Assembly: GCA_977030845.1 (NCBI GenBank)
Contig: OZ365113.1
Coordinates: 11,284,001 to 11,348,000, forward strand
Length of the DNA: 64,000 nt
Origin: Fimbriosthenelais zetlandica
Taxonomy: Eukaryota
Direction: 5' to 3'
The notes beneath the pieces were generated by a model, which saw only the letters and a list, made by a program, of their open reading frames with translations, was not told the origin of the DNA and made no database searches. The number at the start of each line of letters is the position of its first letter. The stretch's first letter is position 1. The position numbers and the translations under genes were made by a program. Positions 38 to 18,570 of the stretch are shown one piece after another.

Positions 38-3000
38 CTTTAAAAATTAAAAAGAAAAGAATGACCTCATGAAATTTATAGTAGAAGTACTGAGACTAGG
101 TTGTGAACCCGGCGAGTTTTAATTTAAATACTTTTATACTTTTTATTACTTGTAAAATGTGTAAATTCTAAGATTAATTATTGTACATATATATGTTGTA
201 TTATTAGTAAAATTTTTGTATCAGGACCGCCTGAAAAAACACCGAATGGTGGTAATGGTTTTTTGTAAAGTGTCCTTGTTTAAATAAAAAAAAAAAAAAA
301 AAATGCTATAGACGACTTACTTTTCATTGAGTCGCCATAATGTGTTATGTTTGACGGCCGCTCCGGCTGTGACGACCCCTGGTTGGATGAGGGCAGTAGG
401 TAGACTAGTAGCCACATAGATACCATCCCGGTTAACGCTATGTCCACCTCCACCACTCGCCTCCCCAGTTACCCTGCTATCTGATTTACTAGACACAGGG
501 GGGTTCTGAGACAGGAAACGGCTGGGAACTTGGTAGGAGACAGGGTAAGGACGCTTAATGGGCGTTATAGCATTGACAGGTGTTGTCTCCTTAGCCTAAT
601 AAAAGAAATACAAAGAAGGCTTTCATCAATCATACCATTCCTTTAATAAGTGTAACTGTTTTACTCAACATTAATTATATTTTTTTTTTAGTTAGAATTT
701 TTATAGAGCCATATTATGGGTGAATACCAGCTCACACTCTTGATTACTCAAGTTTTCGTATGATTTTCAGCTGGGGGCTCTTTCTAAGTGCATTGCTACA
801 TTGCCTTCTGTGCAATGGATATTTCTAGGTGCATGTGCTCTAGAACATATGTACAACAGAGCATTTAGAGCATTTATAAGAGCATTTAGAGGATTAATCA
901 CAATTTAATATATTTATGTTAATCCTAATAGTAAATTGGATAGTTTGTCCTCACCTGTACTGCTTGAACTTGGACAGGGTGGGTGTCTCCGACTTTGGCC
1001 CTCGCGGCCCGGGATATTGGTCCATATTTGGAAACCACTGTGTGCTCGAACGGAATAAATTCATCCTCATCTTCAGCTAGCCACAACCTGCAATCAATGG
1101 ATTCAAGAATAACTTATCGATATCAGATAGAAAAGGCCGCTGTGAAAATTATTTATTTTATTTAAATACTGTAATGAAAAATTATTTGATCAATTAGGTG
1201 AAGGAATTAGGGGAGATATATCACTGAGGGGTTGCAATTGATGAAATTGAAATTGAATTTTTCTGATTAACTAAAGCATATGTGCGGAGACTGTCAAATA
1301 ACTGAATTACAAACAATAAGAGCAGGTTGTGACCCCGGCGAGTTTTTAATTTAAATAATTTTTTTTTTTTTGATACTTGTGTTAATTGGCATAATTTGTA
1401 ACATTGGATTATTGTATACATTGTATTATGAGGAATTATTTAAAGTTAAATTTGTGTTGTATCAGGACCGCCTGAAAAGACGCCGAAAGGTGGAAATGGC
1501 TTTGTAAAAGTGTCCTTGAAATAATAATAAAAAAAAAAAAATGAATATTTGTGAAAGGTTGAGTGGATAATCCAAGGAAGAAAGGCTTACGGGTAATCTC
1601 TGAGTGAGAACTCAGGGCGGGCGCCGTCACTTGGTGGGATGTGGGTGTGTGAGTGAGAACAACCCGCATGTCCAACGGCCGGAGCCACGTTATACGACGA
1701 CATGGTGGTTGTGGATGAAGGAACTGACTGGATCAGCTTAGAAAAAAATATATACATAACAGGTAAGACATTTAATATACATAAAAATATACATAACAGG
1801 TAAGACATTTAATATACATAAAAATATACATAACAGGTAAGACATTTAATATACATGTACATAAAAATATACATAAGGGGCAAGGCATCAGACATTTAAT
1901 GACACATAACCAAAGATGGGAGTGATTTCATGAATGTACTGTTGCCTGGGACCCTTCTCGGTTAGCAGCAATGGGTCATATACATGCCCCTCACGCCGCA
2001 CCAGATGTAACGGGAGACATGATCAGCTTTTCATTTAAGAGAGTTTAAGCAGCAATAAACCATGGACCACCGTGTAAAGTCCTATAAAGAGAATGTTTAT
2101 ATCAGTTTATGTACTTACATAGACAGGTCTGGATGGTGTGTAATGACCCTGAGCTGTGGGGTTCGCCTCTAGCATTGAGTTGTACAGGGTTCGCTGTAAT
2201 TTCATATTACCCCTCAAGTTCGGGTTCGGTCGAGCAGGTCCATTTTCAACTGGAACAAAGAAGGCATTTAATACACTTTTAACAATAAATAGTTACTTTT
2301 TTTTCAATTCAATGACACCATTATTTAACTCCTATACAAGTAAGAAGTGAGCTGACCTCTGTGCATGGCCATGGTGGTGAGACTTGTAGCTAGGCTATCA
2401 GCCACACTCATGCTGATCTTGGTTGTTAGTGGGATCTGTAGTATAGCCGGAGCACTCTCAGGCTCGGTGATAGCCACATTTTTCTCTTCCCGTGCTGGTA
2501 GCTGTGACTCTTTGAGATGGGAGATGAGCTCTGTTTTACGCCGCTGAAGCTCCTGTAACTGTTGTGANNNNNNNNNNNNNNNNNNNNNNNNNNNNNNNNN
2601 NNNNNNNNNNNNNNNNNNNNNNNNNNNNNNNNNNNNNNNNNNNNNNNNNNNNNNNNNNNNNNNNNNNNNNNNNNNNNNNNNNNNNNNNNNNNNNNNNNNN
2701 NNNNAATGAATAGATGGATCAATGAATGAACGAACGGATGAATGAATGGATAGATGAATGGATGAATGAATGAATGAATGAATGAATGAACGAACGAACG
2801 GATGAATGAATGAATGAATGGCTATATGGGTCAATATCAAAATCAGGAACATGAGTAAATGGTCCATGACTTCCCCGTTTGTACAATGTCCAAAAATTAA
2901 ACCAAAATCATTAAAATTATCCTATAAAAACATGATATTTTAAAACAATAGAACGTAAGGACCATGTGTCACCTTTGTAGCAGCAGCTATGTTAGCAGAG

Positions 3001-6000
3001 AGATAGTAGTGAGAGTCACTGGTGGGGATGTTTACACGGGTGGTGCGGGTGTACGGGTTAGCAGGCATACACAGTACTGGATCCATGGAAGGACTGGTGG
3101 CAGACGGGAGAGGAGGAGACTCCACCGGGGGTGCTACAGGTGATCGGGGCTGCGTGGAGATGGTGGATATCGTGGTCATACCTGAGGTGAACAATGAAAA
3201 CAAGACGATTTAAATCAATGTTAATAGTCGCTTCTTGCTGTTGGTTTTAAAAGGTAATTTTTTTTTATTTTTTTTTAATATTTAGGATGTTTATACAGCG
3301 ACATAATCAATGAATGTATTCAAATGCTTTTAGAAATGAATCATTATGAATAAGATTGAATACAGAGATTTGCCGATGTAAGTATGGTTATATTGGTGAT
3401 TTATTGGTAAACTCACGGTCTTCAGGGTAGACTATATTGGGAGGTGGAGCTCGTTGAGAGACGGGTACAGCAGGCGGGGTGAAACTATCCTGTCTGGCCT
3501 GGGTCGGCGAGGTGTAGATAGTCTGCTGGGCTATAGCTTTCTTCGCTTGTACTGGCATGATGGAGGGTTTACCTACAGGCACAGTGACGGGAGCTTCTGA
3601 CGCGGGCAACACAGAGGATCTGTACAACAAGGATAGACAAATAAGCAATATTAAATTCAATATTAAATTTAATAAAGTAGAAAAGAATAGTCGGGATTTA
3701 ATGGAATCAAATTTAAACCTGAGAGGATAGGCATTATACTGAAACATCATTTCTTGTAAAAAGAAAAATATCTTTCGAGGGTAATCAAGAAATATTAGTA
3801 AATACCTGGTTATTGTAAGGGGAGGAGGGGTCTCCCGCTCCACGGGGGTCTGTTTCTGGCTTGCGGCACTAAAAGCTAAGAAATCAGCTTCAGCACTGGC
3901 TGACTCCACCACAAGTTGCTTAGGCTTCTTTATTCCAAACTTCTTGTTCTGATTCCGAAATCTGGGGGTTTAGAATCAGATGATTAGATCATTTCAAACA
4001 ATGGCTCCCTTTCAACCTTACACCTTATTCGAATTGTAAATTATATGGAAAATCTAACCCTGAAGCCAACCCCACAACGACCCAGCGTATTCGATTGCAA
4101 AACCATAAACTTGAGCCCCTTGAGCACAAATTCCTTTTAGGAAAAAGTGCTAAAGACAACAAATTTCTTTTAGCAATTTGCAGTTGGCGTTAGCAGATGT
4201 CAATTTGAATGAAACATTGCTAGTTGGATTTTTTGATATTTGTGTGATTTTGCGGTGGTTAGGTGTGATTTTTAGTTCGCAAAATTAGCGAATAACAGTC
4301 ATTTTCTCTTAGCAATGTAGCATTTTTATTTGCAAATTGCGACAGTGCGATCGGGTACAGCGAGCCCAGAGATACTAGTTATGAAACAGAAGAAGTCAGA
4401 TTGGAGTAACGCACCTTTCCATTTCTTCCTGGGAATGAGCAAAGGTACAGGTGGTGCCCCGGGGACATCGACCTTTCTGTAGGAGGTCACGACACATGGA
4501 CGTTTTAAACTTGTTATTCTGGTGAGCTATAGGTTCAGCCTTCCCCGAGTTACGAGCGTGGAAAAAATCAATGAGACCTTCAACCACGGTCTGAGCTGAA
4601 CGCATAATGGCGTCCAAGTTCTCCCACGATGGCGGCGGACTGTCTGTTGAAAATATATTATACACATTTAATTATATTTGTACCCCTATTTCTATTATCT
4701 GACCAGAAAAAATATTAATTACGTCTAATGTCAATAAGGGATTAAGTATACGATTCTTGCTTACCGGGGCTGGGGTCAATGTTAGCTAGTAGATCAAAAT
4801 GAGCTTTGAGTCGAGAAAGTCCCCCTGGGTCGTTGGTGCGCTGAAGGGCTAGCATAAGTTCTGAGACACTCTGTGAAAATGACTGTGGTGTTTGAAGCTG
4901 GAAATAAATTATATCCGATTTAAGATAAATAATTCACCTACCTATTTCAGATGATTAAAATCATAGAGGAAGTACGTACCTTATCAATGATAGACTGCAT
5001 ATAAGACTTGTGAGCCGCGTCCCCATATAAGAGTGACGACCACTGCTCGGGTGAGATACGGAGACCAGCCTCGGTGGCTATTTGTACAATCTGGGAATCA
5101 TGTTCGCGGCGCAAGGCTTCATAAGTCCTGAACTCGTCCTTCAACTGCATCAGTGATGACTCCTCCTCTCTTTTGGTGACCTAATAGATTAAAGGTTGAC
5201 AACTATTTCAGTCATCTTATTCTCCAGACCACATGATACAATTTATTTCATCCAAACATCCAAACCTGCCCATAATATACGTAGGCCACCAACCCCATGT
5301 AAAATCCCCTGGTGAAGACCGTATAATAAAGGTGGAAAGCTTAGATAAGTTCTGGGTCCTTCCCTTCCATATTCACGTATTTAGAAAACATTTCGTTAAC
5401 CACCGATTGGGAGCGGAGAAACCTAATATAGTTTACCTTGAAGCATGAAGCTCGGTACAGGAGTTGCACTACATGGCCCACGGCGGTTTTAGAAGCTTGC
5501 GTGTATTGTGATTCCAGTCGTTGAACGGCAAAGAGTACAAGTACTTTACGAGACAAGGCCGATCCATCCTCAAGAGCCAGTAATACCAACTTGAGGACCT
5601 CTTCTTGCATGGCTTTAAAATAAAATAATCAAGTTTTCTCCTGAATATTTATGCATCATATGTAGTAAATAAGTAATGTTACAAGAATAGTCTTTCATGG
5701 AAGACTTAATAAGCATTTTCAAAGTGTGTCAAACCTTTAAGATTCGGGGTTTTTTTGGGTTTTTTTTTATATAATCTATTTTTATTCTTGAGGTGTATAC
5801 AAATGTTTATGTAACAACTAGCGGTCTCGGGATGTTTTACAGTTATCGATCCCTTACCTGGGCCCAGGAACTGACAACCTCTGGCCCTCACTGCCGCCCA
5901 CAGATTGGCTGAGAGTTGTTGAGGGTTTTGGTGTTGCAGTATTAACTCTGTGACAGTCCTTTCTCCCAGAGATCGTGCGGCACGCATGGCTCGTGCCCGA

Positions 6001-6767
6001 CCCTCTTCCTCCAGTAGTTGACAGTTGACAAGGGTGACAAGCTTCCTCTGCATGGGTCGACTTAATACTGGACCAGCAGAGGAACTTGACTGGCTCCCGG
6101 AGGCTACAATAAAGACGTGATAAAAACATGAGGTTAAACTCAATTAATAAATAAATTGTATAAAACCATTGGATCCGACAGGAAAAGTGGATGGAATTGA
6201 GGAAAGGTGAAGTAAAACTTACGTTGGGAGGACATGGGTTTTAAATGGACAGCAAGGTTCTCGATACATCTTTTGGCTGAAGTGTAAAACTTGTAATTTT
6301 CGGCTAGACTGTCAGCAGCATGGTTGGTTTCTAACTGGTCAGGAATGGCAACACCCACTAGCTGCAGGAGGGCAAAGTTAACGGGCAGTTCATCGATCTC
6401 CCTGGAAATGACATTCTGATCAAATGGACATTTCTTCTGCTCAAACTTCTCAAGACACACCTAGAAAGACAAGAAAATAAAATGCAAGTCCGGGAAAAGT
6501 GAGGGAAGACAATTTCCTATCATATATTATTTACTGTCCCTCCCATTTATTAGGTTCCACCCAAAATATTTAGGCTAGATGTAGCCCATAATAGTATACC
6601 AGAATATAACATGGGAAATAATCAAATTACTGTACCTTGCAAATTGTGTGTCCACATCCTAAACTTATGGGTCGGTGATGAGTCTCTCCAAAGACATTGT
6701 AACAGATAGGACAAGAGAGGAACTCCGTCCATTGCGGGGCTGTCGTGGGCGGGCTTATTTTACTCAT
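1..6767 (-). CDS. RC3H1/RC3H2: Roquin (RING - ROQ/HEPN - CCCH zinc finger RNA-binding E3 ligase), multi-exon, 3' end beyond window start
   Basis: Hand-spliced GT-AG exons, phase-consistent except across the N gap: 6636-6767, 6223-6460, 5858-6103, 5437-5612, 4980-5180, 4765-4897, 4415-4643, 3806-3961, 3417-3619, 2973-3181, 2357-(>=2567, 5' part in N gap), 2119-2249, 1591-1736, 955-1087, 321-595, 1-37. Hallmarks: [57 protein letters not shown]...[19 protein letters not shown]...SKYGPISR. Confidence 0.97.
98..303 (+). mobile_element. 5'-truncated non-LTR retroelement 3' end with poly(A), antisense in a Roquin intron
   Basis: Aligns by eye with 1324-1541 (AGGTTGTGA.CCCGGCGAGTTTT...TCAGGACCGCCTGAAAA...GTGTCCTTG..A-tail). 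Confidence 0.7.
321..595 (-). CDS. RC3H1/RC3H2: Roquin coding exon 15
   Basis: Open frame [24 protein letters not shown]...HNTLWRLNE; TATTAG acceptor, AA|GTAAGT donor. Confidence 0.82.
686..831 (+). repeat. Dispersed repeat family copy 1 of 3
   Basis: TTTTAGTTAGAATTT.TATAG.GCC...CCAGCT.ACACTCTTGATTA.TCAAGTTTTCGTATGATTTTCAGCTGGGGGCTC also occurs at 58124-58274 (+) and partially at 9708-9797 (-). Confidence 0.85.
955..1087 (-). CDS. RC3H1/RC3H2: Roquin coding exon 14 (conserved C-terminal motif)
   Basis: [44 protein letters not shown] resembles the vertebrate DIIPF...SKWGAISR motif; TTGCAG acceptor, CAG|GTGAGG donor. Confidence 0.92.
1145..1541 (+). mobile_element. Longer copy of the same LINE-like 3' end with poly(A), antisense in a Roquin intron
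   Basis: Shared 3' 218 bp with 98-303. The extra 5' part reads as a decayed LINE ORF2 C-terminus ([10 protein letters not shown]...L.G...IF), recognised by eye only. Confidence 0.6.
1591..1736 (-). CDS. RC3H1/RC3H2: Roquin coding exon 13
   Basis: [25 protein letters not shown]...EFSLRDYP; TTTCTAAG acceptor, CC|GTAAG donor, phase 0 to 2. Confidence 0.8.
1746..1865. repeat. 37-bp tandem repeat, ~3 copies
   Basis: Unit ATACATAACAGGTAAGACATTTAATATACATAAAAAT; AGGTAAG at 1761, 1798, 1835. Confidence 0.95.
2119..2249 (-). CDS. RC3H1/RC3H2: Roquin coding exon 12
   Basis: [44 protein letters not shown]; TTCCAG acceptor, GTAAGT donor, phase 1 to 0. Confidence 0.82.
2357..2567 (-). CDS. RC3H1/RC3H2: Roquin coding exon 11 (5' part hidden in N gap)
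   Basis: [18 protein letters not shown] resembles the Roquin QLEELxxRKxEI coiled segment; donor AG|GTCAGC gives phase 1, matching the next exon. Confidence 0.85.
2568..2704. other. Assembly gap (137 N) next to an (ATGA)n microsatellite
   Basis: N run directly visible; (ATGA/ACGA)n at 2705-2820. Confidence 0.99.
2705..2820. repeat. (AATG)n-type microsatellite
   Basis: Imperfect ATGA/ATGG/ACGA tetramers. Confidence 0.95.
2973..3181 (-). CDS. RC3H1/RC3H2: Roquin coding exon 10 (Pro-rich region)
   Basis: [25 protein letters not shown]...[13 protein letters not shown]; CCTCAG acceptor, AAG|GTGACA donor. Confidence 0.86.
3417..3619 (-). CDS. RC3H1/RC3H2: Roquin coding exon 9 (Pro-rich region)
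   Basis: [18 protein letters not shown]...[12 protein letters not shown]; GTACAG acceptor, C|GTGAGT donor. Confidence 0.88.
3806..3961 (-). CDS. RC3H1/RC3H2: Roquin coding exon 8
   Basis: (R)[27 protein letters not shown]...PPLTITR; phase 2 in and out, canonical sites. Confidence 0.88.
4415..4643 (-). CDS. RC3H1/RC3H2: Roquin coding exon 7 (CCCH zinc finger)
   Basis: [32 protein letters not shown]. Confidence 0.96.
4765..4897 (-). CDS. RC3H1/RC3H2: Roquin coding exon 6 (HEPN-C)
   Basis: [44 protein letters not shown]; TTCCAG acceptor, G|GTAAG donor. Confidence 0.93.
4980..5180 (-). CDS. RC3H1/RC3H2: Roquin coding exon 5 (ROQ domain)
   Basis: [67 protein letters not shown]. Confidence 0.97.
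5437..5612 (-). CDS. RC3H1/RC3H2: Roquin coding exon 4 (ROQ domain)
   Basis: [34 protein letters not shown]...[19 protein letters not shown]. Confidence 0.97.
5858..6103 (-). CDS. RC3H1/RC3H2: Roquin coding exon 3 (ROQ domain)
   Basis: [69 protein letters not shown]; donor G|GTAAG. Confidence 0.97.
6223..6460 (-). CDS. RC3H1/RC3H2: Roquin coding exon 2 (RING C-half, HEPN-N)
   Basis: [15 protein letters not shown]...[12 protein letters not shown]...[14 protein letters not shown]; TTTCTAG acceptor, C|GTAAGT donor. Confidence 0.95.
6636..6767 (-). CDS. RC3H1/RC3H2: Roquin coding exon 1 (start codon, RING N-half)
   Basis: [44 protein letters not shown]; acceptor TTGCAG just upstream (exon starts 6777); donor AAG|GTACA; not in the ORF track (<60 aa). 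Confidence 0.95.
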
Positions 6768-9985: not shown

Positions 9986-10646
9986 ATGGACGAGGCAGGA
10001 GTAACCGTTGAAGTAGAGCCTCAAGAAGCCCCGACTTTAAAGCGGCCTGCAGATGACAACAGTGATGTAGATGCTCCTCCGTCCAAAGTTGCCAAGACTC
10101 CAAGCTCGTTCAAAAATGTCTTCAGACAACTGAGTCTCATGCGACCCGGTCTTCTCTTCGACTTGGAAGGTGAAGTGGCTTCTGACGGTGTGACGTCGTT
10201 GTATACTATGGTGGTTGACGTGGACGGTGTCAAATTCAGAGGGACCGGTCCAAGTAAGAGAAATGCCAAGGTCCTGGCAGGAGAGCAGGTACTAGCTCAC
10301 CTTGAGGCCCTTGGTGTGAAGCCAATACCAGAGAGTGAACGGCCGCCTAAACCTGAAAATACCAATAAAGGACAGTCCCAAAGTCAAGCTAGCACACTGA
10401 CTGAGGAACAAAAAGCTCAACAGATGGCGGGCAAAAACCCAGTCATGATGCTTCATGAGATAAGACCCAGTTTTGATTGTGAAATTGTGTCGGATGAACG
10501 GAAGGGGACCAGCCGGCGTGTGGAGATGGCCATCACAGTGGACGGGAAGAAGTTTACTGGAGGTGGACGCAGCAATAAGATTGCCAGGGCAAAGGCTGCC
10601 GTCTCCGCACTAGAATCACTCTTTTCATTGGAATTCACAGATTTTG
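9986..10646 (+). CDS. Gene A coding exon 1: bipartite NLS + dsRBD1 + dsRBD2 (ADAR2/ILF3-type dsRBDs)
   Basis: Acceptor TTTTCAG ending 9979, ATG at 9986. LKRPADD..PPSKVAK NLS; L..MRPGL...FRGTGPSKRNAK; GKNPVMMLHEIRP...VDGKKFTGGGRSNKIARAKAAVSALESLF. Two in-phase donors: G|GTGAAA (exon end 10646) or A|GTGAGA (exon end 10652). Confidence 0.92.
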
Positions 10647-10788
10647 GTGAAAGTGAGATATTTTGGAGTTATAAGTAATTCCTTTGGTTGAGTAGCGTCA
10701 TGGCATTATCTAGACATTGGGTATAATCATGCCCTTCGTCTCTTATGTATTCTATCTTTGTAGTTTTATCTTTTTGCTTCCGTTTCAG

Positions 10789-11921
10789 ATGAGATTCCAG
10801 TTTATCTTGGTGACGAAATGAATTGGAGGAAATTTACCAAAAAGGCGGAGAAATCTGCACCAAATCAGACAGCTGATGGTAAGCACCTAAAGAACGCTAT
10901 GATGCAGCTAAATGACATGTATAAAGGTCTTGAATTCAAAGTGAAAGAACGATCTGGACCCGACCACTGCCCTTTCTTCAAAGTGAATGTTGAAATAGAG
11001 GGACAAACATTTGAGGGGCAGGGTAGCACTAAAAAATCGGCCAAGTTAGATGCAGCAGAAAAAGCCTTGGTTGGTTTGTCGCTCACTGGTGCACTGGCTC
11101 AGAGGGCTTCCCAGAAAAGACAGCAAAAATTTGGCACCTCGGTCAAATGGAAAAACGGCGGTCAAGGTGGACAAGGTAAGAATGTACCACAACTGACCCA
11201 ATCTTTCCAGCCAGCCTCTAGTAATGGGTCTGGTGGGGCAGGGAAGCCATGGCAGTCGTCTGGGTCTGGTCGTGGTCGTGGATGGAATCGTCCATCGATG
11301 ATGGGGGATGGTCGTAATGCCAATCAGAATGGACAAATGGGCGGATCAGGGAGAGGTGGTACACAGAGAGGACGCGGTCGTGGGGGTTTGGGTCGTGGTC
11401 GTGGTCGTGGTGGAATGGGTCGTGGTAGCAGCTACAGTCAAGTCATGGAGGGTTACGGTTCTATGTCCGGCCAGCAGACATCCACCTCTGGCCGTGGTGC
11501 TTCCAAATTATTCACTGGTCGGGGTGTTGGTGATTTGAGCAATAACCTCTCCACTGATTTATCTACACTAGGTGGACTAACATCTGAGTCTAGTAGTCCC
11601 ATCACAGGAAGAGGCAGGGGCCAGACACATGCCCCGCTCTATGGTCGTACCTCCCAAGCTGGTCAAAGCTGGGACCAGCAAGCAACATGGAATCATACTT
11701 ACTCCTCCTACCAAGATCCTTATGATACCAACAGTCAGTGGAAATCGCAAGATTATGGTTATGACACTGGTTATGATGCCTCATACGACACTGGTTATGA
11801 TACCACTGCTTATGATACCACTGGTTATGATACAAACTATGATACTACTTATGACTCTACTTACACTGGTGGATATCAAGGTGAAAGCTCGGAGTGGAGC
11901 TCTGAATATTATCACTACTAG
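10789..11921 (+). CDS. Gene A coding exon 2: dsRBD3 + RGG/RG region + Tyr/Gly/Ser/Asp-rich low-complexity tail
   Basis: Acceptor TTTCAG ending 10788, phase 1. KNAMMQLNDMYKGLEFKVKERSGPDHCPFFKVNVEIEGQTFEGQGSTKKSAKLDAAEKAL is close to ADAR2 dsRBD1; GRGRGG repeats; YDTGY-type repeats; stop TAG at 11919-11921. Confidence 0.93.
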
Positions 11922-13127
11922 AAGCATGGTTGTGATGGACATGAAAAAATCCGAATTATAAATTTGCCCAAAGACGGCAGAGAGCCAGGAACAACGCTGG
12001 ATAGATTATAAATGATAAATTGCTGGAAAACTGAAAATGACCAGAGAAATGTTGTAAAAGAACAGAAAAAATGAACTTTAGCTTTTCAATGACGTCGGTT
12101 CATTATCATACCGTTACATTTACTTCTACGATATCATCGTGCAAAAGTGAGAATTTGATGTTTATTTTACTTGTGAGTGACACGGTCGTCACCCGTGGGT
12201 CTCCCAGATCCACTTTATATATGCTGCAGATGTGTTGTGAGTGACAAGACAAGGAATCATCTCCACGAAAGGACGATATATTATCAGTTCTTGGAAAATA
12301 TCAGTTATTCGTCTACTTATCATCTCCGTCTTTTTTACTTATTTTCCCTCCAGAGCTACCACTGATCCAAAGCACTTGCTGATGTTATCCCTAGGTGGTA
12401 CATAATATTATGTTGCTAAGTGTTGTGCATCTTTTGTGATCTAACTTTTGTCTGGTAGATTAAGGCTTGTTGGTGAACAGTAAGAACTAAACTTTGAAGA
12501 TCAAATTTATTCTTTTAGAGCTGGCACATACCTTTTTACATTTATAAAAATAAGAATATTGATGGATTGCAGTATAATTCAAGTTACATAATTTTGTATT
12601 TATATTGGGAGCTGTAATTTGCCCCTTAGATGAAACGAGCATAATTGAATGTCATTTTGTTATGCATGTTAAACTACTTGGTAAATTTTCTTATGAAGAT
12701 CCAACCCGTGATTCGCAGTGATCAGCAGAATTGTCTAGAGTATCAGATGTGTTACCTGTGCCAAGGGAGGCATGCTTGGTGGGTATGAATCGTAGAATTG
12801 CCAATAAAAATGTAGAATAGTTTAATCAAATGAAGCCCTGTCCATGTCCGGAGCAAATCATGTTGATTGCTGGTTTAATTGTATGTATGTTCATAAAGAC
12901 AATTTTGTCTTTCTCTTCATCTAATGGAAGCACCAGTTTAGAGGTTAGTTTATATATTTATCATATGTATAAGCATGTCCAATGGTTGGGCCTAGTCCAA
13001 AAGGCCCAATACAGCAACGCCTCGGTGAAAGTGAATTGAACTTTAATGTACTTGATTTGCTCATGGTACTATGACCATTTGATAGATCAATGAAATAAGT
13101 ACACGCTGTGCTCCACAATTCTACCAC

Positions 13128-13210
13128 CAAATTCCCGCCATCTTTCGACTTTACGTGAATCCAATGATAAGGAATGACTCATTGATTAGGAGCAAAACCG
13201 TTTTGAAATT
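13128..13210. promoter_or_regulatory. Candidate promoter motif cluster upstream of gene B
   Basis: TTCCCGCC (E2F-like) 13132-13139, CCAAT 13161, TGACTCA 13175-13181, TTTGAA (CHR-like) 13202. Confidence 0.3.
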
Positions 13211-15328
13211 TCACAAATTGATTTTGATTGAGAGAGAGTGCCTCTCAGCATCTGGAGGACACTGAGCTCAAGGCATCAACGTTGGACTTTACTGTGAGGA
13301 ACGTAGATATTGTCTCCTTTGCATCTCATCCAAAGCTTCTCATGCTCCTATAGGCCGCAGAACGTGATAGACTATTATATTAGATGGTTATAAGTCGCCT
13401 TCTCACCACCCCCCCCCCCCCCCCCCACCTTTAACTTTTAAGTAGATATACCTGCACCTCTCTACATATCCATTCCTAAGCGTGTATTCCCAGGTATTAT
13501 GCCAAGTATTCTCAGACCTGTATCTATCAATCAGCCCGACCTGTCTTTTTTCCAAGTTGAGGACCAAATGTAGACATGACCTTGCACCTGATGACATCCT
13601 ATGATCAAGATAAGTGACTCAGGATCGCTTTGCAATTAACAAATTTAAATTGGACCAGTGGATTCCGTCGGGTTTCTTTCCTTCGATTCAGTCCTAGGAT
13701 TGGAATGATAATTGCTATTATCGTAATGATAGAGATATCAGATTGGAAAGTTGTATAAATCCTAATCTTGCAATTATATAATATATATTCTACGTATCAT
13801 TGACAGTCTTTGTACTGAGCTAATGCGTCCATGTATCTACCTATCTGACAGACTTCCCATCGTTTGGTCGAGAATAACATTTCTTCATGACCATGATGCA
13901 TATTTCCCTTTACAGCGACTTATACCGATCTTAACTTGCAATATAGCGCTACACAGGAGAGATCGTGGAAAGCAAAACATCTAATTATTGAAATGGATAT
14001 TGTCACCACTGTTGAAATTTCTCGATCTTGAATGTATAAGATATGTATACCAGAACTGATTAGGAAGTGCTGATCATTATTTTGTTGATTAATGACCATT
14101 GAAGAATTTTGGAAAAAGCACCTCGGCTCAGTATGATCTCAAATTTTGCTACCGTGGATTTCTTTTGTTTCAATAAAATCCACAATGATGTACACATGTA
14201 TGACCAGGTGTATGAAGTCACCGAAGAGAAATACACTAGATGCCGGCGACTATAGATGGTTCTAAAAATATAAACTATAACTCGATGGGTACAGCAGGCT
14301 GCTAGCCGAGGGAAGACATATATTCTCATAGAATTATAACAATCGTAATGGCCTCTGTATTTGTGATCAGACATGTTATGTACATATTTGTAAAAGTTCA
14401 AAATTAGATAGGTTGGAATTCGTCGCAAAAAAGTCCTTCGGGGAGTGGTGTTTCTGGACAATAATTGGGGTTTGTGTTTAAAGCAACTTTATCATCTATT
14501 GCCTAATGATTGCAAGTGAAAACGCCCTTTTTTCTAAAGTATAATTTGTATCTGTATATATGATAATGGTCTAAGGGGGTATAGGCTACATTTAATTTGT
14601 CCTTGCACGCTTGGTTGACTTTGGGCAAAGTTAACCCAAAAACCTGTTAGTGACCAAGTGGACAACTGATTGCATTTCAGAACATAATGTATGTTAATCT
14701 CTGGTCACCTCAAAATGAAGGTGAAAAACACATTATGAACAAACTCCCCAAAGATTTATTATGCATGGTATTCTATTAGTGTGTGTAATAGTATTCATTT
14801 CTACAGTAACTCTAGGCCTATACATGTTATTGGACCCGTGTTCACTTGTAAGTCGTAAAGAATTCATGGCAATTTGGTAGAAGAAAATGTTATTAAAAGG
14901 AATCCTTGTTTTAGCACCATTAAATGTCTTTTGTAAAAAATAAACCGCCTTTGCTTTATTATGTCAATGGGGTTATGGTATAAGAATATTTTACCATTAT
15001 TAATTTTGATTCTGCTCACCACACTCCCCCCACCCCCTCCAAACATACCCATGCATGCCGATTTGTTTATATTTAAGTTTTTTTCCAAGTGTTTTTTGAT
15101 AAAAGGTTCATTATGATGAATTAGTTTTCTCAATGACGAATGTTTGGTAAAATAATAATTTTCCATCTTTTTAATTCCTTATTTTCACAATATTATCGTG
15201 CTCTTGAATATTTTGTCCAATCTGAATCTGGTAGTATTTTATTGAATACCATTACTTATAATTACTTACACATATTATATCATTTCTCAAACACAGGGAA
15301 TGGAGAAGAAATAGGAAAAGTGGAGAAC

Positions 15329-16760
15329 ATGATCGTGGCAATGAAGTCAGAAGTAGTCCAGGATGATAATATAAAGATGGATAGACTAAGTGATAAACGC
15401 TCTGCTGACATGAGAGATATACAAGATGAAATGAAACGACATGAGACAAAGGCCCGCCCGGGAGACCAGCCCCGTATAAAGATTAAAGAAACTAGTACGC
15501 CTAAAGTTCTTAAGAGAAAGATTGAGGTGAAATTTGAAGATTCACTAACTCCTAACGAAGCTACAACACTAGATAAACAGGAAACCAAGAGGAGGAAAAA
15601 CAACGGAGATGAATTGAAGAAGCAAGTCAATTCGAAAGAAGCAAGTGATGTTGAAACCAGATCCCTGACCAAAAAAAGTATGATTTTGAAAACCTATGAG
15701 AAATATAATCTCAGGGAAAGAAAGTATAAATGTACTACAGTTGATGCAGGGAGAGATGATTTCCTCAACTTTGACAATATTTTAACGGATCAGAAGGAAA
15801 CAAAGAGTACGAAAGAGAACAAACATGAAATGAAGATACACCGTAAACATGATAAAACTGGCAGTGGAAGTGGCCAACCCCCTGAAGTAGTGAAGACGCC
15901 AACTCGTGTTGAAACCAAATCCAAAGTCCCAAATCCACAGAGCAAAGATGCCATGAAGATAGAATGTAAAGAGGCGAGAAAGGACAGTGGGGGAAACCAG
16001 CCTCTTGAAAAAAGGAAAGAAACGAGGTTGCCTCGTCCTAATGTTGACACCAAAACTAAAGTTGCTGATGAGTATGAGCGTAAGTTTGAGTTGGATCATG
16101 ACTATGATTCCCTTACTCCTGTCAAAGTTATTATAATTGATGACTCGGAGACAGAGAGTAGTGATGGAGAGGTTCCAAATGAGTCTGATGTGATGGTCAT
16201 CAGTAGTGACGAGTCAGAGTCAGAGAGTAGTGATGGAATGTATGGAGAGGTTCCACGTGAGTCCAATGGTATAATAATCAGTAGTGACGAAGATGAGCTT
16301 GAAGAGGAGAGATGGCTGACCAACAGCTGTACAAAACCGGTGAAAAAGAGAATCCGGTACCTTTATCAGTTCAAGCCTGACCTCCAACATGTTCAAGCAG
16401 AGAGAGTGGGTTCCGTCTACCAAATACAGTCCACCATTAATGTTCACAGGTATGTTGGTAAAGGTGCAACAAAACTTATGGCCAAATTATCTTTAGCCTC
16501 AAGATTTTGGTACTCGCTTTGCGAGGATTGCCCTATTACCCGGCACCCAATGACAGCTTTGACTCAACTGATGGGTGGTAGTAGATATGGCGAAGAGTCA
16601 CTGAATATTGATGCTGAAAACAGAGGGTGGTATGCTACTGAAGTAATCATACCGGGACATGGAAAATTTACTGCCAACGGTCCAACCCAAAAATCTGCAC
16701 GTTTCCTCGCAGCGGCAAAAGCAATCGAAACAATTTTTGGGTTGAAGTGTGAAACCAGTA
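15329..16760 (+). CDS. Gene B coding exon 1: charged disordered N-terminus, 3 SIM-like motifs, 2 divergent dsRBDs
   Basis: Acceptor ...AAACACAG ending 15296; first in-frame ATG at 15329 (alternative 15341). dsRBD-like KKRIRYLYQFKPDL...YVGKGATKLMAK and RHPMTAL...KFTANGPTQKSARFLAAAKAIETIFGL; donor A|GTGAGT at 16760/16761 (phase 1). Upstream coding exons are not excluded. Confidence 0.82.
16121..16309 (+). repeat. Tandemly duplicated ~66-75-bp unit encoding hydrophobic-core + Ser/acidic (SIM-like) motifs
   Basis: GAGAGTAGTGATGGA...GAGGTTCCA...ATCAGTAGTGACGA recurs; protein VKVIIIDDSETESSD / DVMVISSDESESESSD / GIIISSDEDELEEE. Confidence 0.85.
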
Positions 16761-16972
16761 GTGAGTATTTGATTTATTTATTAGGGCCCTATGATACATT
16801 AAATTAATCTGATCGATTTAATAGCTCCATGTCCCAGGCATTAAGATACTGTGTTAATATAAATGTGTTCGATATAAATCGGGTGCCTACTGTTTATTTC
16901 TCATAGCAATTGGACTACATTGTATTTGATAAAATATAGCTAAAATACAAATTTAAATTATACTTTTCACAG

Positions 16973-18570
16973 ATAGACTGCCGGTGATCAGTCATAGGCC
17001 TAATGGCTTGATGTCCTCTTCCGAGATGAAGATGCTCCTTTCCAAGAAGCCGCTCAATTCCAAGAAGAAGCCGCTCATTTCCAAGAAGAAGCCGCTCAAT
17101 TCCAAGAAGAAGCCGCTCACTTCCAAGAAGAAGCCTCTCACTTCCGAGAAGAAGCCTCTCAATTCCCAGAAGAAGCCTCTCAATTCCCAGAAGAAGCCGC
17201 TCACTTCCGAGAAGAATCCGCTCACTTCCGAGAAGAAGACGCTCACTTCCGAGAAGAAGACGCTCACTTCCGAGAAGAAGCCTCTTAATTCCCAGAAGAA
17301 GCCGCTCACTTCCGAGAAGAAGCCGCTCACTTCCGAGAAGAAGCCGCTCACTTCCGAGAAGAAGCCGCTCACTTCCGAGAAGAAGCCGCTCACTTCCGAG
17401 AAGAAGCAACAAAAGGCAAAGACGTGTAACAACACAGGCCTATCTACAATGCGACAATCCTCTCCCGTAGCAACTACAATGTCGGTGACTGCTACCTTGT
17501 CGACACAGGATAGAGCACTTTGTGACCAACCGAGTAACGCAAAGAAAAGTTTAGGTGGCACTCACACCAGAAAGCTGGCGGACACTTCTCTGTCTCAACC
17601 ATCCTCCCATTCCAAGCTTCCCCGCGACGTGCCAAAACATGTTACCCCAGCTGGTAATTCGAAGAATCCGAAGGACATTAAAGTTAAAGTAGAACCTTCA
17701 ACTTCCCAGGCTGGCCCTAGCAAGAACCATTCCAAGCTTTCCCGCGACGTGCCAAATCATGTTACCCCAGCTGGTAATTCGAAGAATCCGAAGGACATTA
17801 AAGTTAAAGTAGAACCTTCAACTTCCCAGGCTGGCCCTAGCAAGAACCATTCCAAGCTTTCCCGCGACGTGCCAAATCATGTTACCCCAGCTGGTAATTC
17901 GAAGAATCCGAAGGACATTAAAGTTAAAGTAGAACCTTCAACTTCCCAGGCTGGCCTTAGCAAGAACCATTCCAAGATTTCCCGCGACGTGCCAAATCAT
18001 GTTACCCCAGCTGGTAATTCGAAGAATCCGAAGGACATTAAAGTTAAAGTAGAACCTTCAACTTCCCAGGCTGGCCTTAGCAAGAACCATTCCAAGATTT
18101 CCCGCGACGTGCCAAATCATGTTACCCCAGCTGGTAATTCGAAGAATCCGAAGGACATTAAAGTTAAAGTAGAACCTTCAACTTCCCAGCCTCAACCATC
18201 CTCCCATTCTAAGCGTTCCCATGACGTGTCAGAGGGGAGAGCTCCACGTAGTACTACTACTAATACTACTAAGAGCACCGCATATATAAAGGTAGAGCCT
18301 TCATCCTCCCAGCCTCGTCCTAGCAAGGACTCGTCTTCAAATCTCTTTGAAGAACCTAAACCAGGACTGTCTCGCAGCAGACAGTACGAGATAGACAGGA
18401 AACCTATTAAAAGTCTTTTATGTTTGGAATCCGATTCTTCTCGCCCAATGTCCACAAGATCCATCCAGAACCAGGGTATTCACCCGATTGATTATGGTGG
18501 ATATTTCGGCAATTATCCTGCACACAATGGTAGAAGTGACAAAGATTTTACACGGAACTATCGTGAATAA
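16973..18570 (+). CDS. Gene B coding exon 2: Lys-rich heptad array + 40-aa SUMO-site repeats
   Basis: Acceptor TTTTCACAG ending 16972, phase 1, continuing into the 528-aa ORF (NRLPVISHRP...); stop TAA at 18568-18570. Confidence 0.82.
17041..17409 (+). repeat. 21-bp coding minisatellite, ~17.5 copies (S[K/E/Q]KKPL[T/N])
   Basis: Unit TCC[A/G/C]AGAAGAAGCCGCTCACT directly visible. Confidence 0.98.
17608..18327 (+). repeat. 120-bp coding tandem repeat, 5 near-identical copies + 1 degenerate copy
   Basis: Units start at 17608, 17728, 17848, 17968, 18088, with the degenerate copy at 18205; 40-aa unit HSKLSRDVPNHVTPAGNSKNPKDIKVKVEPSTSQAGPSKN. Confidence 0.98.

What the first reader, a model, noticed from the sequence alone, without database searches (positions are those of the whole stretch)
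9986..18570. Genes A and B are tandem paralogues that differ completely in their disordered regions
Seen: both have a phase-1 intron at the same place, right after dsRBD2 (A: LESLFSLEFTDF(GE)^D/NEIPV; B: IETIFGLKCETS^NRLPV). Both dsRBD2s share the atypical KFT..G.xxK.AR..AA..A.E..F.L signature, lacking the first Lys of KKxAK. dsRBD1s align (K...R.L...P.L...S.Y...G.G.K..AK). Gene A has dsRBD3 + RGG + Tyr tail; gene B has SIMs, a basic heptad array and SUMO repeats instead. Inference: duplication followed by wholesale replacement of the intrinsically disordered regions, i.e. the same RNA-binding core routed to two different condensate chemistries (cation-pi vs SUMO-SIM). B looks like a fast-evolving, possibly germline or TE-defence copy.
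Basis: partly seen in the sequence, partly recalled or inferred. Interest (0 to 1): 0.72.

Follow-up and report, generated by a model that had tools for sequence, protein, structure and literature searches.

The report
Diverged tandem copy of dsRNA-binding gene
Two neighbouring genes of an invertebrate (probably a worm or mollusc) very likely descend from one double-stranded-RNA-binding gene. The second copy kept only two worn-down RNA-binding domains and one old intron; all its other parts are new, repeat-built sequence of untested function.

Summary
The sequence observations mostly hold.

**Gene A** (9986-11921, 599 aa) has three Pfam-significant dsRBDs, an RGG stretch and a Tyr-rich tail.

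**Gene B** (15329-18570, 1009 aa) has two degenerate dsRBDs, which no Pfam dsrm model reaches. They are supported by:
- profile searches and hhalign;
- a PDB-wide hit to both ADAR2 dsRBMs, in order;
- an alignment-guided AlphaFold model.

**The intron.** Both genes have a phase-1 intron just after dsRBD2, with the same split AAT codon followed by x-[I/L]-P-V. B's intron lies two codons earlier in the alignment. An ADAR2-like gene on another chromosome has the same intron, so it marks the wider family and is not an A/B-specific trait.

**New evidence for tandem origin.**
- A related species carries a full-length A-like second copy (A') 4.6 kb downstream of A.
- Two single-copy noncoding blocks are collinear between that spacer and the A-B spacer, so B sits where A' sits.
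- B has no homologue in 5.8 billion proteins and no paralogue in its own genome.
- Its two repeat arrays are unique to this locus.

**Not established.** No RNA data could be obtained. Domain trees cannot place B. The SUMO/SIM "condensate" and germline/TE-defence ideas rest on motifs alone.

Verdict: a probable fast-diverged tandem paralogue, of moderate interest.

The parts
9986..10652 (+). Gene A coding exon 1. It holds an NLS-like N-terminus, the atypical dsRBD1 (about 10103-10309) and dsRBD2 (about 10424-10651). It ends in a phase-1 donor, GAA A|GTGAGA.
   Evidence: Pfam dsrm 1.7e-12 with 2 stretches, plus DSRM_2. Sequence read. The donor position is conserved in three relatives. PDB best hits are ADAR2 dsRBM2 (2e-20) and ILF3 dsRBD2 (2e-18).
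10653..10788 (+). Gene A intron: 136 nt, phase 1, split codon A|AT (Asn).
   Evidence: The same junction is present in L007 A, L007 A' and L001 A.
10789..11921 (+). Gene A last exon. It holds dsRBD3 (about 10884-11081), an RGG/RG region (about 11250-11430) and a Tyr/Asp/Thr-rich tail (about 11690-11918).
   Evidence: Pfam dsrm 4.9e-11. PDB best hits are ADAR2 dsRBM1 (7e-28) and ILF3 (1.5e-27). RG and Tyr counts. Orthologues P0001-P0003.
13647..13680 (+). Conserved noncoding block 1 in the A-B spacer. It corresponds to L007 4099-4132 in the A-A' spacer of the relative.
   Evidence: blastn 91% over 34 nt, E 4.5e-7. Alignment. Single copy in the 447-Mb genome at up to 3 mismatches.
14819..14859 (+). 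Conserved noncoding block 2, 470 bp upstream of B's ATG. It corresponds to L007 5840-5878. It ends in a donor-like TT|GTAAGT, so it may be the end of a 5' UTR exon shared by B and A' (inferred).
   Evidence: blastn 85% over 41 nt, E 5.4e-6. Alignment. Single copy in the genome.
15329..16760 (+). Gene B main coding exon, 477 codons plus 1 base. It holds a K/E/D-rich N-terminal region, a SIM-like cluster (16121-16306), a degenerate dsRBD1 (about 16340-16519), a roughly 5-residue linker and a degenerate dsRBD2 (about 16532-16747). It ends in a phase-1 donor, AGT A|GTGAGT. A probable acceptor lies at 15295|15296, and a 4-codon uORF lies at 15300-15314.
   Evidence: ORF and sequence. A-family HMM: 19.7 bits against a maximum of 12.2 in 2000 shuffles. 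hhalign E 1.4e-5. phmmer against 1.84e9 proteins found two dsRBD proteins, at 3.5e-5 and 5.8e-4. PDB-wide hit to the ADAR2 tandem dsRBMs, E 8e-4, both domains in order. AlphaFold with a 9-row alignment: pLDDT 79, two alpha-beta-beta-beta-alpha units. Foldseek top hit is NF90 tandem dsRBDs, 1e-7.
16761..16972 (+). Gene B intron: 212 nt, phase 1, split codon A|AT (Asn). It is predicted from sequence only.
   Evidence: The exon-1 frame stops 47 nt after the donor. The exon-2 frame opens 16 nt before the acceptor. The two frames join correctly.
16973..18570 (+). Gene B last exon. It starts N-R-L-P-V. It holds a 21-bp (heptad KKPLTSE-type) array at 17044-17407 and a 120-bp (40-aa) array at 17607-18189, each unit of which carries I-K-V-K-V-E-P. 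A unique tail follows. It has no dsRBD3, no RGG and no Tyr tail.
   Evidence: TRF: 17.3 copies at 93% and 4.9 copies at 99%. No similarity to A exon 2. The 21-bp unit occurs only at this locus. Genome hits to this exon cover only the low-complexity heptad region.

Best explanation
Gene B is a real, lineage-specific and very strongly diverged tandem duplicate of gene A.

**What A is.** A belongs to a small family, seen so far in four related species. The family combines ADAR2/ILF3-type dsRBDs with an RGG stretch and a Tyr-rich tail. It has no DZF domain and no deaminase domain.

**How B arose (inferred).** The duplication gave a full-length second copy (A'), which is still intact in a relative. 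In the window's lineage, the gene at that position kept only three things:
- the exon that encodes two dsRBDs, both now degenerate;
- the ancestral phase-1 intron just after dsRBD2;
- the first few codons of the next exon (N-x-L-P-V).

dsRBD3, RGG and the Tyr tail were lost. B gained a roughly 330-residue charged N-terminal region with SIM-like motifs. It also gained a C-terminal exon built largely by tandem repeats (21 bp and 120 bp) that expanded at this locus.

**What is shown.**
- The gene structures, as read from the DNA.
- dsRBD-type similarity of both B domains.
- The position of A' and the collinear spacer blocks.
- The absence of any B homologue.

**What is inferred.**
- That B descends from A' rather than having replaced it.
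- That B is spliced as drawn.
- That it still binds dsRNA.

**Most likely working mode (inferred, low certainty).** B is a nuclear protein that binds structured or double-stranded RNA weakly through two non-canonical dsRBDs. Its partners are set by its new disordered regions.
For: - **Position.** B has the same strand as A and lies 3.4 kb downstream.
- **Second copy in a relative.** L007, L008 and L009 carry A plus an intact A-like copy, A' (575 aa, 3 dsRBDs, 14 RG, Tyr tail), 4.6 kb downstream on the same strand.
- **Collinear spacers.** Two single-copy noncoding blocks are collinear between the A-A' spacer and the A-B spacer.
- **No other second copy.** There is no other dsrm hit on this part of contig C19, so no separate A' exists here. 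There is no relic of A exon 2 around B.
- **Timing of the duplication.** The ML tree puts A' outside the window-A plus L007-A pair, which places the duplication before the species split. This support is weak.
- **dsRBD2 affinity.** B's dsRBD2 scores 22.1, 17.1 and 16.6 bits against A-family dsRBD2. It scores 12.1 against ADAR2-like d2 and at most 10 against other dsRBD genes of the genome.
- **Profile support.** An A-family HMM built without B hits both B domains in order, above all 2000 shuffles. hhalign gives E 1.4e-5 for dsRBD1.
- **Shared junction.** Both genes have the junction phase 1 / A|AT / x-[IL]-P-V.
- **Coding capacity.** A 555-codon open frame in DNA of about 38% GC argues for a maintained coding gene.
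- **Lineage restriction.** B has no homologue in 5.8e9 or 1.84e9 proteins, and no paralogue in its own genome.
- **Local origin of the repeats.** The 21-bp repeat unit occurs only at this locus.
Against: - Direct A-B similarity is tiny: 28 residues.
- B is not closer to A' than to A.
- Domain trees cannot place B. No alternative was rejected by AU tests (p 0.19-0.43), and B's branches are 3.3-3.8 changes per site.
- An L007-specific duplication is not rejected (AU p 0.06-0.09).
- The intron and the P-V junction also occur in the ADAR2-like gene, so they do not single out A as the parent.
- By pairwise score, B's dsRBD1 resembles ADAR2-like d1 (13.7 bits) more than A's d1 (4.9 bits).
- The relative's contigs end 1.6 kb after A', so a B gene further downstream in that species cannot be excluded.
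- No transcript evidence exists for B or for its splice.
- The good AlphaFold model depended on an alignment of dsRBD proteins. The single-sequence model was poor (pLDDT 42).
Confidence: 0.6

Rival explanations
1. B belongs to the ADAR2/ILF3/A group of dsRBD genes but is not a direct tandem copy of A. Its two-dsRBD exon would come from an ADAR2-like or older family member, by transposed duplication or exon capture. Its place next to A would then be coincidence, or A' would have been lost and B inserted.
For: - The phase-1 intron and the x-E/L-P-V junction also occur in the ADAR2-like gene on C13.
- B's dsRBD1 scores best against ADAR2-like d1 (13.7 bits), against 4.9 for A's d1.
- The only significant PDB sequence hit is ADAR2, with both dsRBMs matched in order.
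- The ML domain tree puts B's d2 beside ADAR2-like d2, with weak support (72/33).
Against: - Adjacency, shared orientation and the A' copy at the matching position in a relative, with collinear single-copy spacer blocks, all favour local origin.
- B's d2 scores higher against A-family d2 from three species than against ADAR2-like d2.
- The tree groups B's d1 with the atypical A-type d1 (89/58).
- B has no deaminase remnant.
Confidence: 0.17
2. B is not a working gene as drawn. It would be a decaying remnant of A' whose long open frames are partly a by-product of in-frame tandem repeats. Alternatively, exon 1 is used alone and the repeat exon is not joined to it.
For: - No RNA evidence could be obtained.
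- The dsRBDs fall below Pfam thresholds and lack the GPxH loop.
- The repeat region is also open on the minus strand (165- and 189-aa ORFs), which shows that repeats alone can keep frames open.
- The arrays are very young (93% and 99% identity between copies).
Against: - The non-repetitive 555-codon frame of exon 1 is far too long for chance in AT-rich DNA.
- The donor GTGAGT and the acceptor, with a pyrimidine tract before cag, are good sites. They join the two frames correctly, and both frames close within 16-47 nt outside the proposed exon ends.
- The non-repeat parts of exon 2 are also open.
Confidence: 0.15
3. A and B carry the same RNA-binding core into two different condensates. A would act through RGG/Tyr cation-pi contacts. 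B would act through a self-assembling SUMO-SIM network, perhaps in the germline or in transposon defence. This concerns function and is compatible with the best explanation.
For: - B has 12 psi-K-x-[DE] motifs against 3.2 +/- 1.7 expected; A and A' have 0 and 1.
- B has three hydrophobic cores followed by Asp/Glu/Ser runs, which is the usual form of SIMs (SIM review PMC12751080).
- A has 15 RG dipeptides and a Tyr-rich tail.
Against: - Five of the six C-terminal motifs are copies of one 120-bp unit that expanded recently, so they count as one event.
- Short motifs of this kind are common in charged disordered proteins.
- There are no expression, localisation or binding data.
- B's dsRBDs lack several canonical RNA-contact residues, so 'same RNA-binding core' is doubtful.
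Confidence: 0.15
4. Chance resemblance. B has no dsRBDs and is unrelated to A.
For: There is no PF00035 hit. The single-sequence AlphaFold model was poor.
Against: Several independent methods agree on dsRBD-type similarity:
- library-wide phmmer hits to dsRBD proteins;
- a PDB-wide hit to ADAR2, with both domains matched in order;
- an HMM score above all 2000 shuffles;
- hhalign E 1.4e-5;
- all of the nearest protein-atlas clusters that carry a Pfam family are dsrm.
Confidence: 0.03

Closest known systems
ADAR2 (ADARB1) tandem dsRBM1-dsRBM2, PDB 2l3j, and the ADAR2-like gene of this genome (C13:17441603-17456338)
   Same: - It is the best PDB sequence match for A's dsRBD2 (2e-20), for A's dsRBD3 (7e-28) and for B, where both domains match in order (8e-4).
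- The genome's ADAR2-like gene has both dsRBDs in one exon.
- That exon is followed by a phase-1 intron 4 codons after L-E-F, and the next exon starts L-E-P-V.
   Different: A and B have no deaminase domain. A has a third dsRBD, RGG and a Tyr tail. B has SIM-like motifs and repeat arrays.
ILF3/NF90-NF110 and STRBP (DZF + two dsRBDs + RGG + GQSY tail), PDB 5dv7 and 3p1x
   Same: - A's dsRBDs match at 1.5e-27 and 2e-18.
- A's RGG plus Tyr-rich tail resembles the NF110 C-terminus. This point rests on my own knowledge of ILF3.
- The Foldseek top hit of the B model is the NF90 tandem dsRBDs (1e-7).
   Different: - Neither A nor B has a DZF domain. DZF hits in this genome lie on other contigs.
- The domain order in A is atypical d1, then a d2-like domain, then a d1-like domain.
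Lineage-specific, fast-evolving dsRNA-binding-protein paralogues: Aedes loqs2 (PMC10809485), Drosophila Blanks (PMC7144943) and testis RNAi-gene expansions (PMC12697358)
   Same: This is the same kind of event. A dsRBD gene is duplicated and one copy diverges quickly in a narrow lineage while it keeps two dsRBDs.
   Different: - Those genes belong to the Loqs/R2D2 group and have expression and functional data. B belongs to the ADAR2/ILF3 type and has none.
- The scale of flank replacement in B, and its SIM and psi-K-x-E arrays, are not described for them in the papers I listed. I saw only their titles and abstracts.
Poly-SIM and multi-SUMO-site scaffold proteins (general class; SIM review PMC12751080)
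   Same: B has hydrophobic cores followed by acidic/Ser runs and repeated psi-K-x-E sites.
   Different: The match is at motif level only. I know of no poly-SIM protein that carries dsRBDs, and one literature search found none. Nothing about SUMO was tested here.

Membership tests
dsRBD (Pfam PF00035 dsrm) | Score above the Pfam gathering threshold | tested here: not met
   For B there is no PF00035 hit at E<=10, and only DSRM_2 (PF24995) at 15.9 bits against a cut-off of 27. For A the threshold is met for all three domains.
dsRBD (Pfam PF00035 dsrm) | Alpha-beta-beta-beta-alpha fold | tested here: inconclusive
   With a 9-row alignment of dsRBD proteins the B model shows two such units (pLDDT 79), and it matches tandem-dsRBD structures. 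The alignment biases this result, and the single-sequence model was poor.
dsRBD (Pfam PF00035 dsrm) | Significant sequence similarity to known dsRBDs | tested here: met
   Hits at 3.5e-5 and 5.8e-4 against 1.84e9 proteins. ADAR2 at 8e-4 across the PDB, both domains in order. hhalign 1.4e-5. HMM score above 2000 shuffles.
dsRBD (Pfam PF00035 dsrm) | Canonical RNA-contact motifs (GPxH loop; KKxAK at the start of helix 2) | tested here: not met
   B's d1 reads T-K-L-M-A-K and has a shortened beta1-beta2 loop. B's d2 reads T-Q-K-S-A-R and has no His loop. A's d2 likewise reads S-N-K-I-A-R. Whether B binds RNA cannot be tested here.
Gene-A family (tandem paralogue claim) | Two dsRBDs in one exon, followed by a phase-1 intron and an exon that starts x-[EIL]-P-V | tested here: met
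   The feature is also present in the ADAR2-like gene, so it defines the wider group rather than A alone. B's intron lies two codons earlier in the alignment.
Gene-A family (tandem paralogue claim) | dsRBD3 + RGG + Tyr-rich tail in the last exon | tested here: not met
   B exon 2 has no similarity to A exon 2. It has 1 RG, 0 RGG and no dsrm hit.
Gene-A family (tandem paralogue claim) | Syntenic position of a second copy beside A | tested here: met
   A' lies 4.6 kb downstream of A in L007, L008 and L009. The single-copy spacer blocks are collinear.
Gene-A family (tandem paralogue claim) | Phylogenetic grouping of B's domains with the matching A domains | tested here: inconclusive
   B's d1 groups with A's d1 (89/58), and B's d2 falls in the d2-type group. 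No alternative was rejected.
ILF3/STRBP | DZF domain N-terminal to the dsRBDs | tested here: not met
   A and B have no DZF domain in Pfam. DZF hits in the genome occur only on C10 and C1.
ADAR | Adenosine-deaminase domain | tested here: not met
   Neither A nor B gave an adenosine-deaminase hit in Pfam. The deaminase domain belongs to the separate C13 gene.
SUMO-SIM scaffold | SUMO conjugation at psi-K-x-E sites and SUMO binding by the SIMs | not testable with these tools
   Only motif counts are available.

The most novel reading that the evidence does not exclude
After duplication of an ADAR2/ILF3-type dsRNA-binding gene, one copy was rebuilt within a short evolutionary time into a protein that joins two dsRBDs to both a poly-SIM cluster and a repeated SUMO-acceptor array. 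Such a protein could form an RNA-bound, self-crosslinking SUMO-SIM scaffold. This architecture is not described for any dsRBD protein. It would be a natural example of retargeting an RNA-binding module to a different nuclear body by replacing its disordered regions.
Probability: 0.13. Interest if true: 0.7.

Novelty: new variant of a known kind. Interest (0 to 1): 0.42.

Why it matters
If the reading holds, this locus shows how far a duplicated gene can be remodelled. The folded RNA-binding exon and its intron survive. All disordered parts are exchanged, largely by repeats that grew on the spot, while the sister copy in a related species stays conventional.

That makes a clean natural pair (A against B, and A' against B) for asking how disordered regions set the partners and location of an RNA-binding module.

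The work also defines a small, apparently unannotated family (A). It combines ADAR2-type dsRBDs with an ILF3-like RGG/Tyr tail, and it has neither a DZF nor a deaminase domain.

Without expression or binding data, the value is mainly evolutionary and hypothesis-generating.

Tried and rejected
- **B homologues.** phmmer against 1.84e9 representatives gave only two distant dsRBD proteins and one spurious bacterial repeat protein, P0004. The word-index search with all of B exon 1 gave nothing. Searches of B's own genome with the dsRBD part and the N-terminal part found only B itself.
- **Source of the new parts.** Genome hits to B exon 2 cover only the low-complexity heptad region. The idea that the heptad array is a dispersed minisatellite that became an exon was rejected, because the two-unit pattern occurs only at this locus.
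- **Spacer blocks as repeats.** This was rejected, because both blocks are single copy in 447 Mb.
- **Domain phylogeny and AU tests.** They have no power for B.
- **Single-sequence AlphaFold.** pLDDT 42, not usable.
- **My first label for the C13 exon, 'ILF3-like'.** This was rejected. A deaminase domain follows it, so the gene is ADAR2-like.
- **DNA-level A-B similarity and relics of A exon 2 near B.** None was found.
- **Wider synteny.** Flanks beyond A' and B, and the Roquin side, gave nothing with the short contigs available.
- **Other relatives.** L001 and the third species show no second dsrm ORF within 10 kb downstream of A.
- **Complex prediction.** It was not run, because this report does not claim that A and B bind each other.

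Full report
**Gene models**

The window is AT-rich eukaryotic DNA, about 36-48% GC. Earlier notes of this scan call the genome a probable annelid or mollusc. I did not test that.

Gene A:
- It starts at ATG 9986, directly after an acceptor.
- Its first coding exon ends at 10652 (GAA A|GTGAGA).
- Its last exon runs from 10789 (cag|AT) to the stop at 11921.
- The product is 599 aa.

Gene B:
- It has a 555-codon open frame from 15140, with a likely acceptor at 15295|15296.
- The first in-frame ATG after that acceptor is at 15329.
- The exon ends at 16760 (AGT A|GTGAGT), and the last exon runs 16973-18570.
- The product is 1009 aa.

In both genes the intron is phase 1, the split codon is A|AT (Asn), and the next residues are x-[I/L]-P-V. 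In B the exon-1 frame closes 47 nt after the donor. The exon-2 frame opens 16 nt before the acceptor.

Gene A is as described:
- Pfam finds dsrm in exon 1 (two stretches) and in exon 2.
- It has 15 RG dipeptides and a Tyr-rich tail.

Gene B's composition is also as described:
- It has three hydrophobic cores followed by Asp/Glu/Ser runs.
- It has a 21-bp x 17.3 array (heptads of the KKPLTSE type).
- It has a 120-bp x 4.9 array whose unit carries I-K-V-K-V-E-P.
- It has 12 psi-K-x-[DE] motifs against 3.2 +/- 1.7 in shuffles.
- The last exons of A and B share nothing.

Two corrections are needed.
- The introns are not at exactly the same aligned position. A splices 5 residues after the L-E-F anchor, and B splices 3 residues after L-K-C.
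The three orthologous genes have GGA there and splice after G-E.

**Does B have dsRBDs?**

Pfam says no for PF00035. It gives only a sub-threshold DSRM_2 match (E 0.019) for the second domain. Direct BLASTP of A against B gives one 28-residue match (46% identity, E 2e-4) at the C-terminal helix of dsRBD2.

Other methods agree that both domains are dsRBD-like:
- **Library-wide phmmer.** The 151-residue region searched against 1.84 billion proteins finds two dsRBD proteins, at 3.5e-5 and 5.8e-4. It finds no closer relative.
- **PDB sequences.** The only significant hit is the ADAR2 tandem dsRBM chain (8e-4). B's first domain aligns on dsRBM1 and its second on dsRBM2.
- **A-family HMM built without B.** It scores B at 19.7 bits against a maximum of 12.2 in 2000 shuffles, with two domain hits in order.
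- **hhalign.** It aligns the family's dsRBD1 with B residues 13-71 (E 1.4e-5, probability 80%).
- **Protein atlas.** All of the nearest clusters that carry a Pfam family are dsrm, at sub-threshold scores.
- **AlphaFold.** The single sequence failed (pLDDT 42). With a 9-row alignment the model has two alpha-beta-beta-beta-alpha units (pLDDT 79). Its best PDB match is the NF90 tandem dsRBDs. This model is guided by the alignment, so it is only corroboration.

Both B domains lack the GPxH loop and have incomplete KKxAK motifs. A's dsRBD2 shares the x-K-x-A-R form.

**What family is this?**

A's dsRBD2 and dsRBD3 match ADAR2 and ILF3 about equally well.

In the same genome, the best paralogue of A's dsRBD2 lies on contig C13 (45% identity). 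That exon holds two dsRBDs. It is followed 12 kb downstream by a deaminase domain, so the gene is ADAR2-like. Its dsRBD exon ends in a phase-1 donor 4 codons after L-E-F, and the next exon starts L-E-P-V.

The intron and junction that A and B share are therefore ancestral to a wider group. They place B in that group but do not single out A as its parent.

DZF domains occur only on other contigs, so 'ILF3-like' is a resemblance and not membership.

The A family itself is rare in the databases. Three species gave hits, and none is annotated.

**Evidence for a tandem origin**

- **A second copy in a relative.** In a species whose A is 79-85% identical (L007-L009), an intact second copy, A', lies 4.6 kb downstream of A on the same strand. 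It has the full A architecture.
- **Collinear spacers.** blastn finds two short blocks that are collinear between the A-A' spacer and the A-B spacer:
  - L007 4099-4132 corresponds to window 13647-13680;
  - L007 5840-5878 corresponds to window 14819-14859.
  - Both blocks are single copy in the 447-Mb genome.
  - The second block ends in a donor-like hexamer in both species, so it may be a shared 5' UTR exon. This is inferred.
- **No separate A' here.** The window's chromosome region has no other dsrm hit, and there is no relic of A exon 2 near B.
- **More distant relatives.** Two of them have no second copy within 10 kb downstream of A.
- **Timing.** The ML tree places A' after the split of the most distant species and outside the window-A plus L007-A pair. 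A duplication private to L007 is not rejected (AU p 0.06-0.09).
- **Pairwise scores.** B's dsRBD2 fits A-family dsRBD2 best (22.1, 17.1 and 16.6 bits). It scores 12.1 against ADAR2-like d2 and at most 10 against other dsRBD genes. B's dsRBD1 scores better against ADAR2-like d1 (13.7) than against A's d1 (4.9).
- **Domain tree.** It groups B's d1 with A's d1 (89/58). No alternative placement is rejected, and B's branches are 3.3-3.8 changes per site. Phylogeny therefore does not decide.

**Where the new parts came from**

B's N-terminal 326 residues have no paralogue in the genome and no homologue in 5.8 billion proteins. Genome hits to the last exon cover only the low-complexity heptads. The 21-bp unit is found only at this locus. 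The 120-bp copies are 99% identical. The new disordered parts therefore arose locally and, for the arrays, recently.

**Mechanism and limits**

The best-supported account is duplication of A, followed in this lineage by loss of dsRBD3, RGG and the Tyr tail, and by gain of charged and repeat-built regions around a retained but degenerate two-dsRBD exon (confidence about 0.6).

Whether B binds dsRNA, is SUMOylated or binds SUMO was not tested. Its expression and tissue are also unknown, because no sequencing run could be listed. Comparable cases of lineage-specific, rapidly changing dsRBP paralogues are known in insects (PMC10809485, PMC7144943, PMC12697358). One literature search found no dsRBD protein with SIM arrays.

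Noticed in passing
own genome C13:17441603-17462688 (loci L004, L005, L023, L027, L024): An ADAR2-like gene (NLS plus 2 dsRBDs in one exon, deaminase 12 kb downstream) is followed 5 kb later by a terminal exon. That exon holds 2 dsRBDs, RGG and a Tyr tail. It is the paralogue of gene A's last exon and starts at a phase-1 acceptor (cag|AT, D-D-E-P-P-V-F). No A-exon-1-like exon lies between them. It is either a separate gene with small 5' exons or an alternative 3' end of the ADAR2-like gene. Gene A looks like that locus without the deaminase.
   Followed up: partly
window 2325-6460, minus strand: The exons encode a Roquin-like protein (ROQ-region and CCCH zinc-finger sequences, by eye, on my own knowledge), transcribed divergently from gene A. 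The stretch includes a masked N run near 2500-2650, which I left untouched.
   Followed up: no
window 13647-13680 and 14819-14859: The two conserved single-copy spacer blocks share the core TTGGACCNGTG. Block 1 is preceded by a TGACTCA (AP-1-like) site that is also conserved in L007. They may be regulatory elements or 5' exon ends of B/A'.
   Followed up: partly
window 15300-15314: A four-codon upstream ORF (ATG GAG AAG AAA TAG) lies between B's probable acceptor (15295|15296) and its ATG at 15329.
   Followed up: no
L001 6882-8634: In the 74%-identical relative, the region that matches A's single first coding exon is split into several pieces (dsRBD1 in two parts, then the linker, then dsRBD2). 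That lineage therefore has extra introns, or the window's lineage lost them.
   Followed up: no
P0005 (Protopterus annectens LOC122811791, 2012 aa): This lungfish protein has a DZF domain followed by many repeated dsRBDs and a long acidic repeat tail. It is an expanded ILF3/STRBP-like protein, and it was the best library-wide dsRBD hit for B.
   Followed up: no
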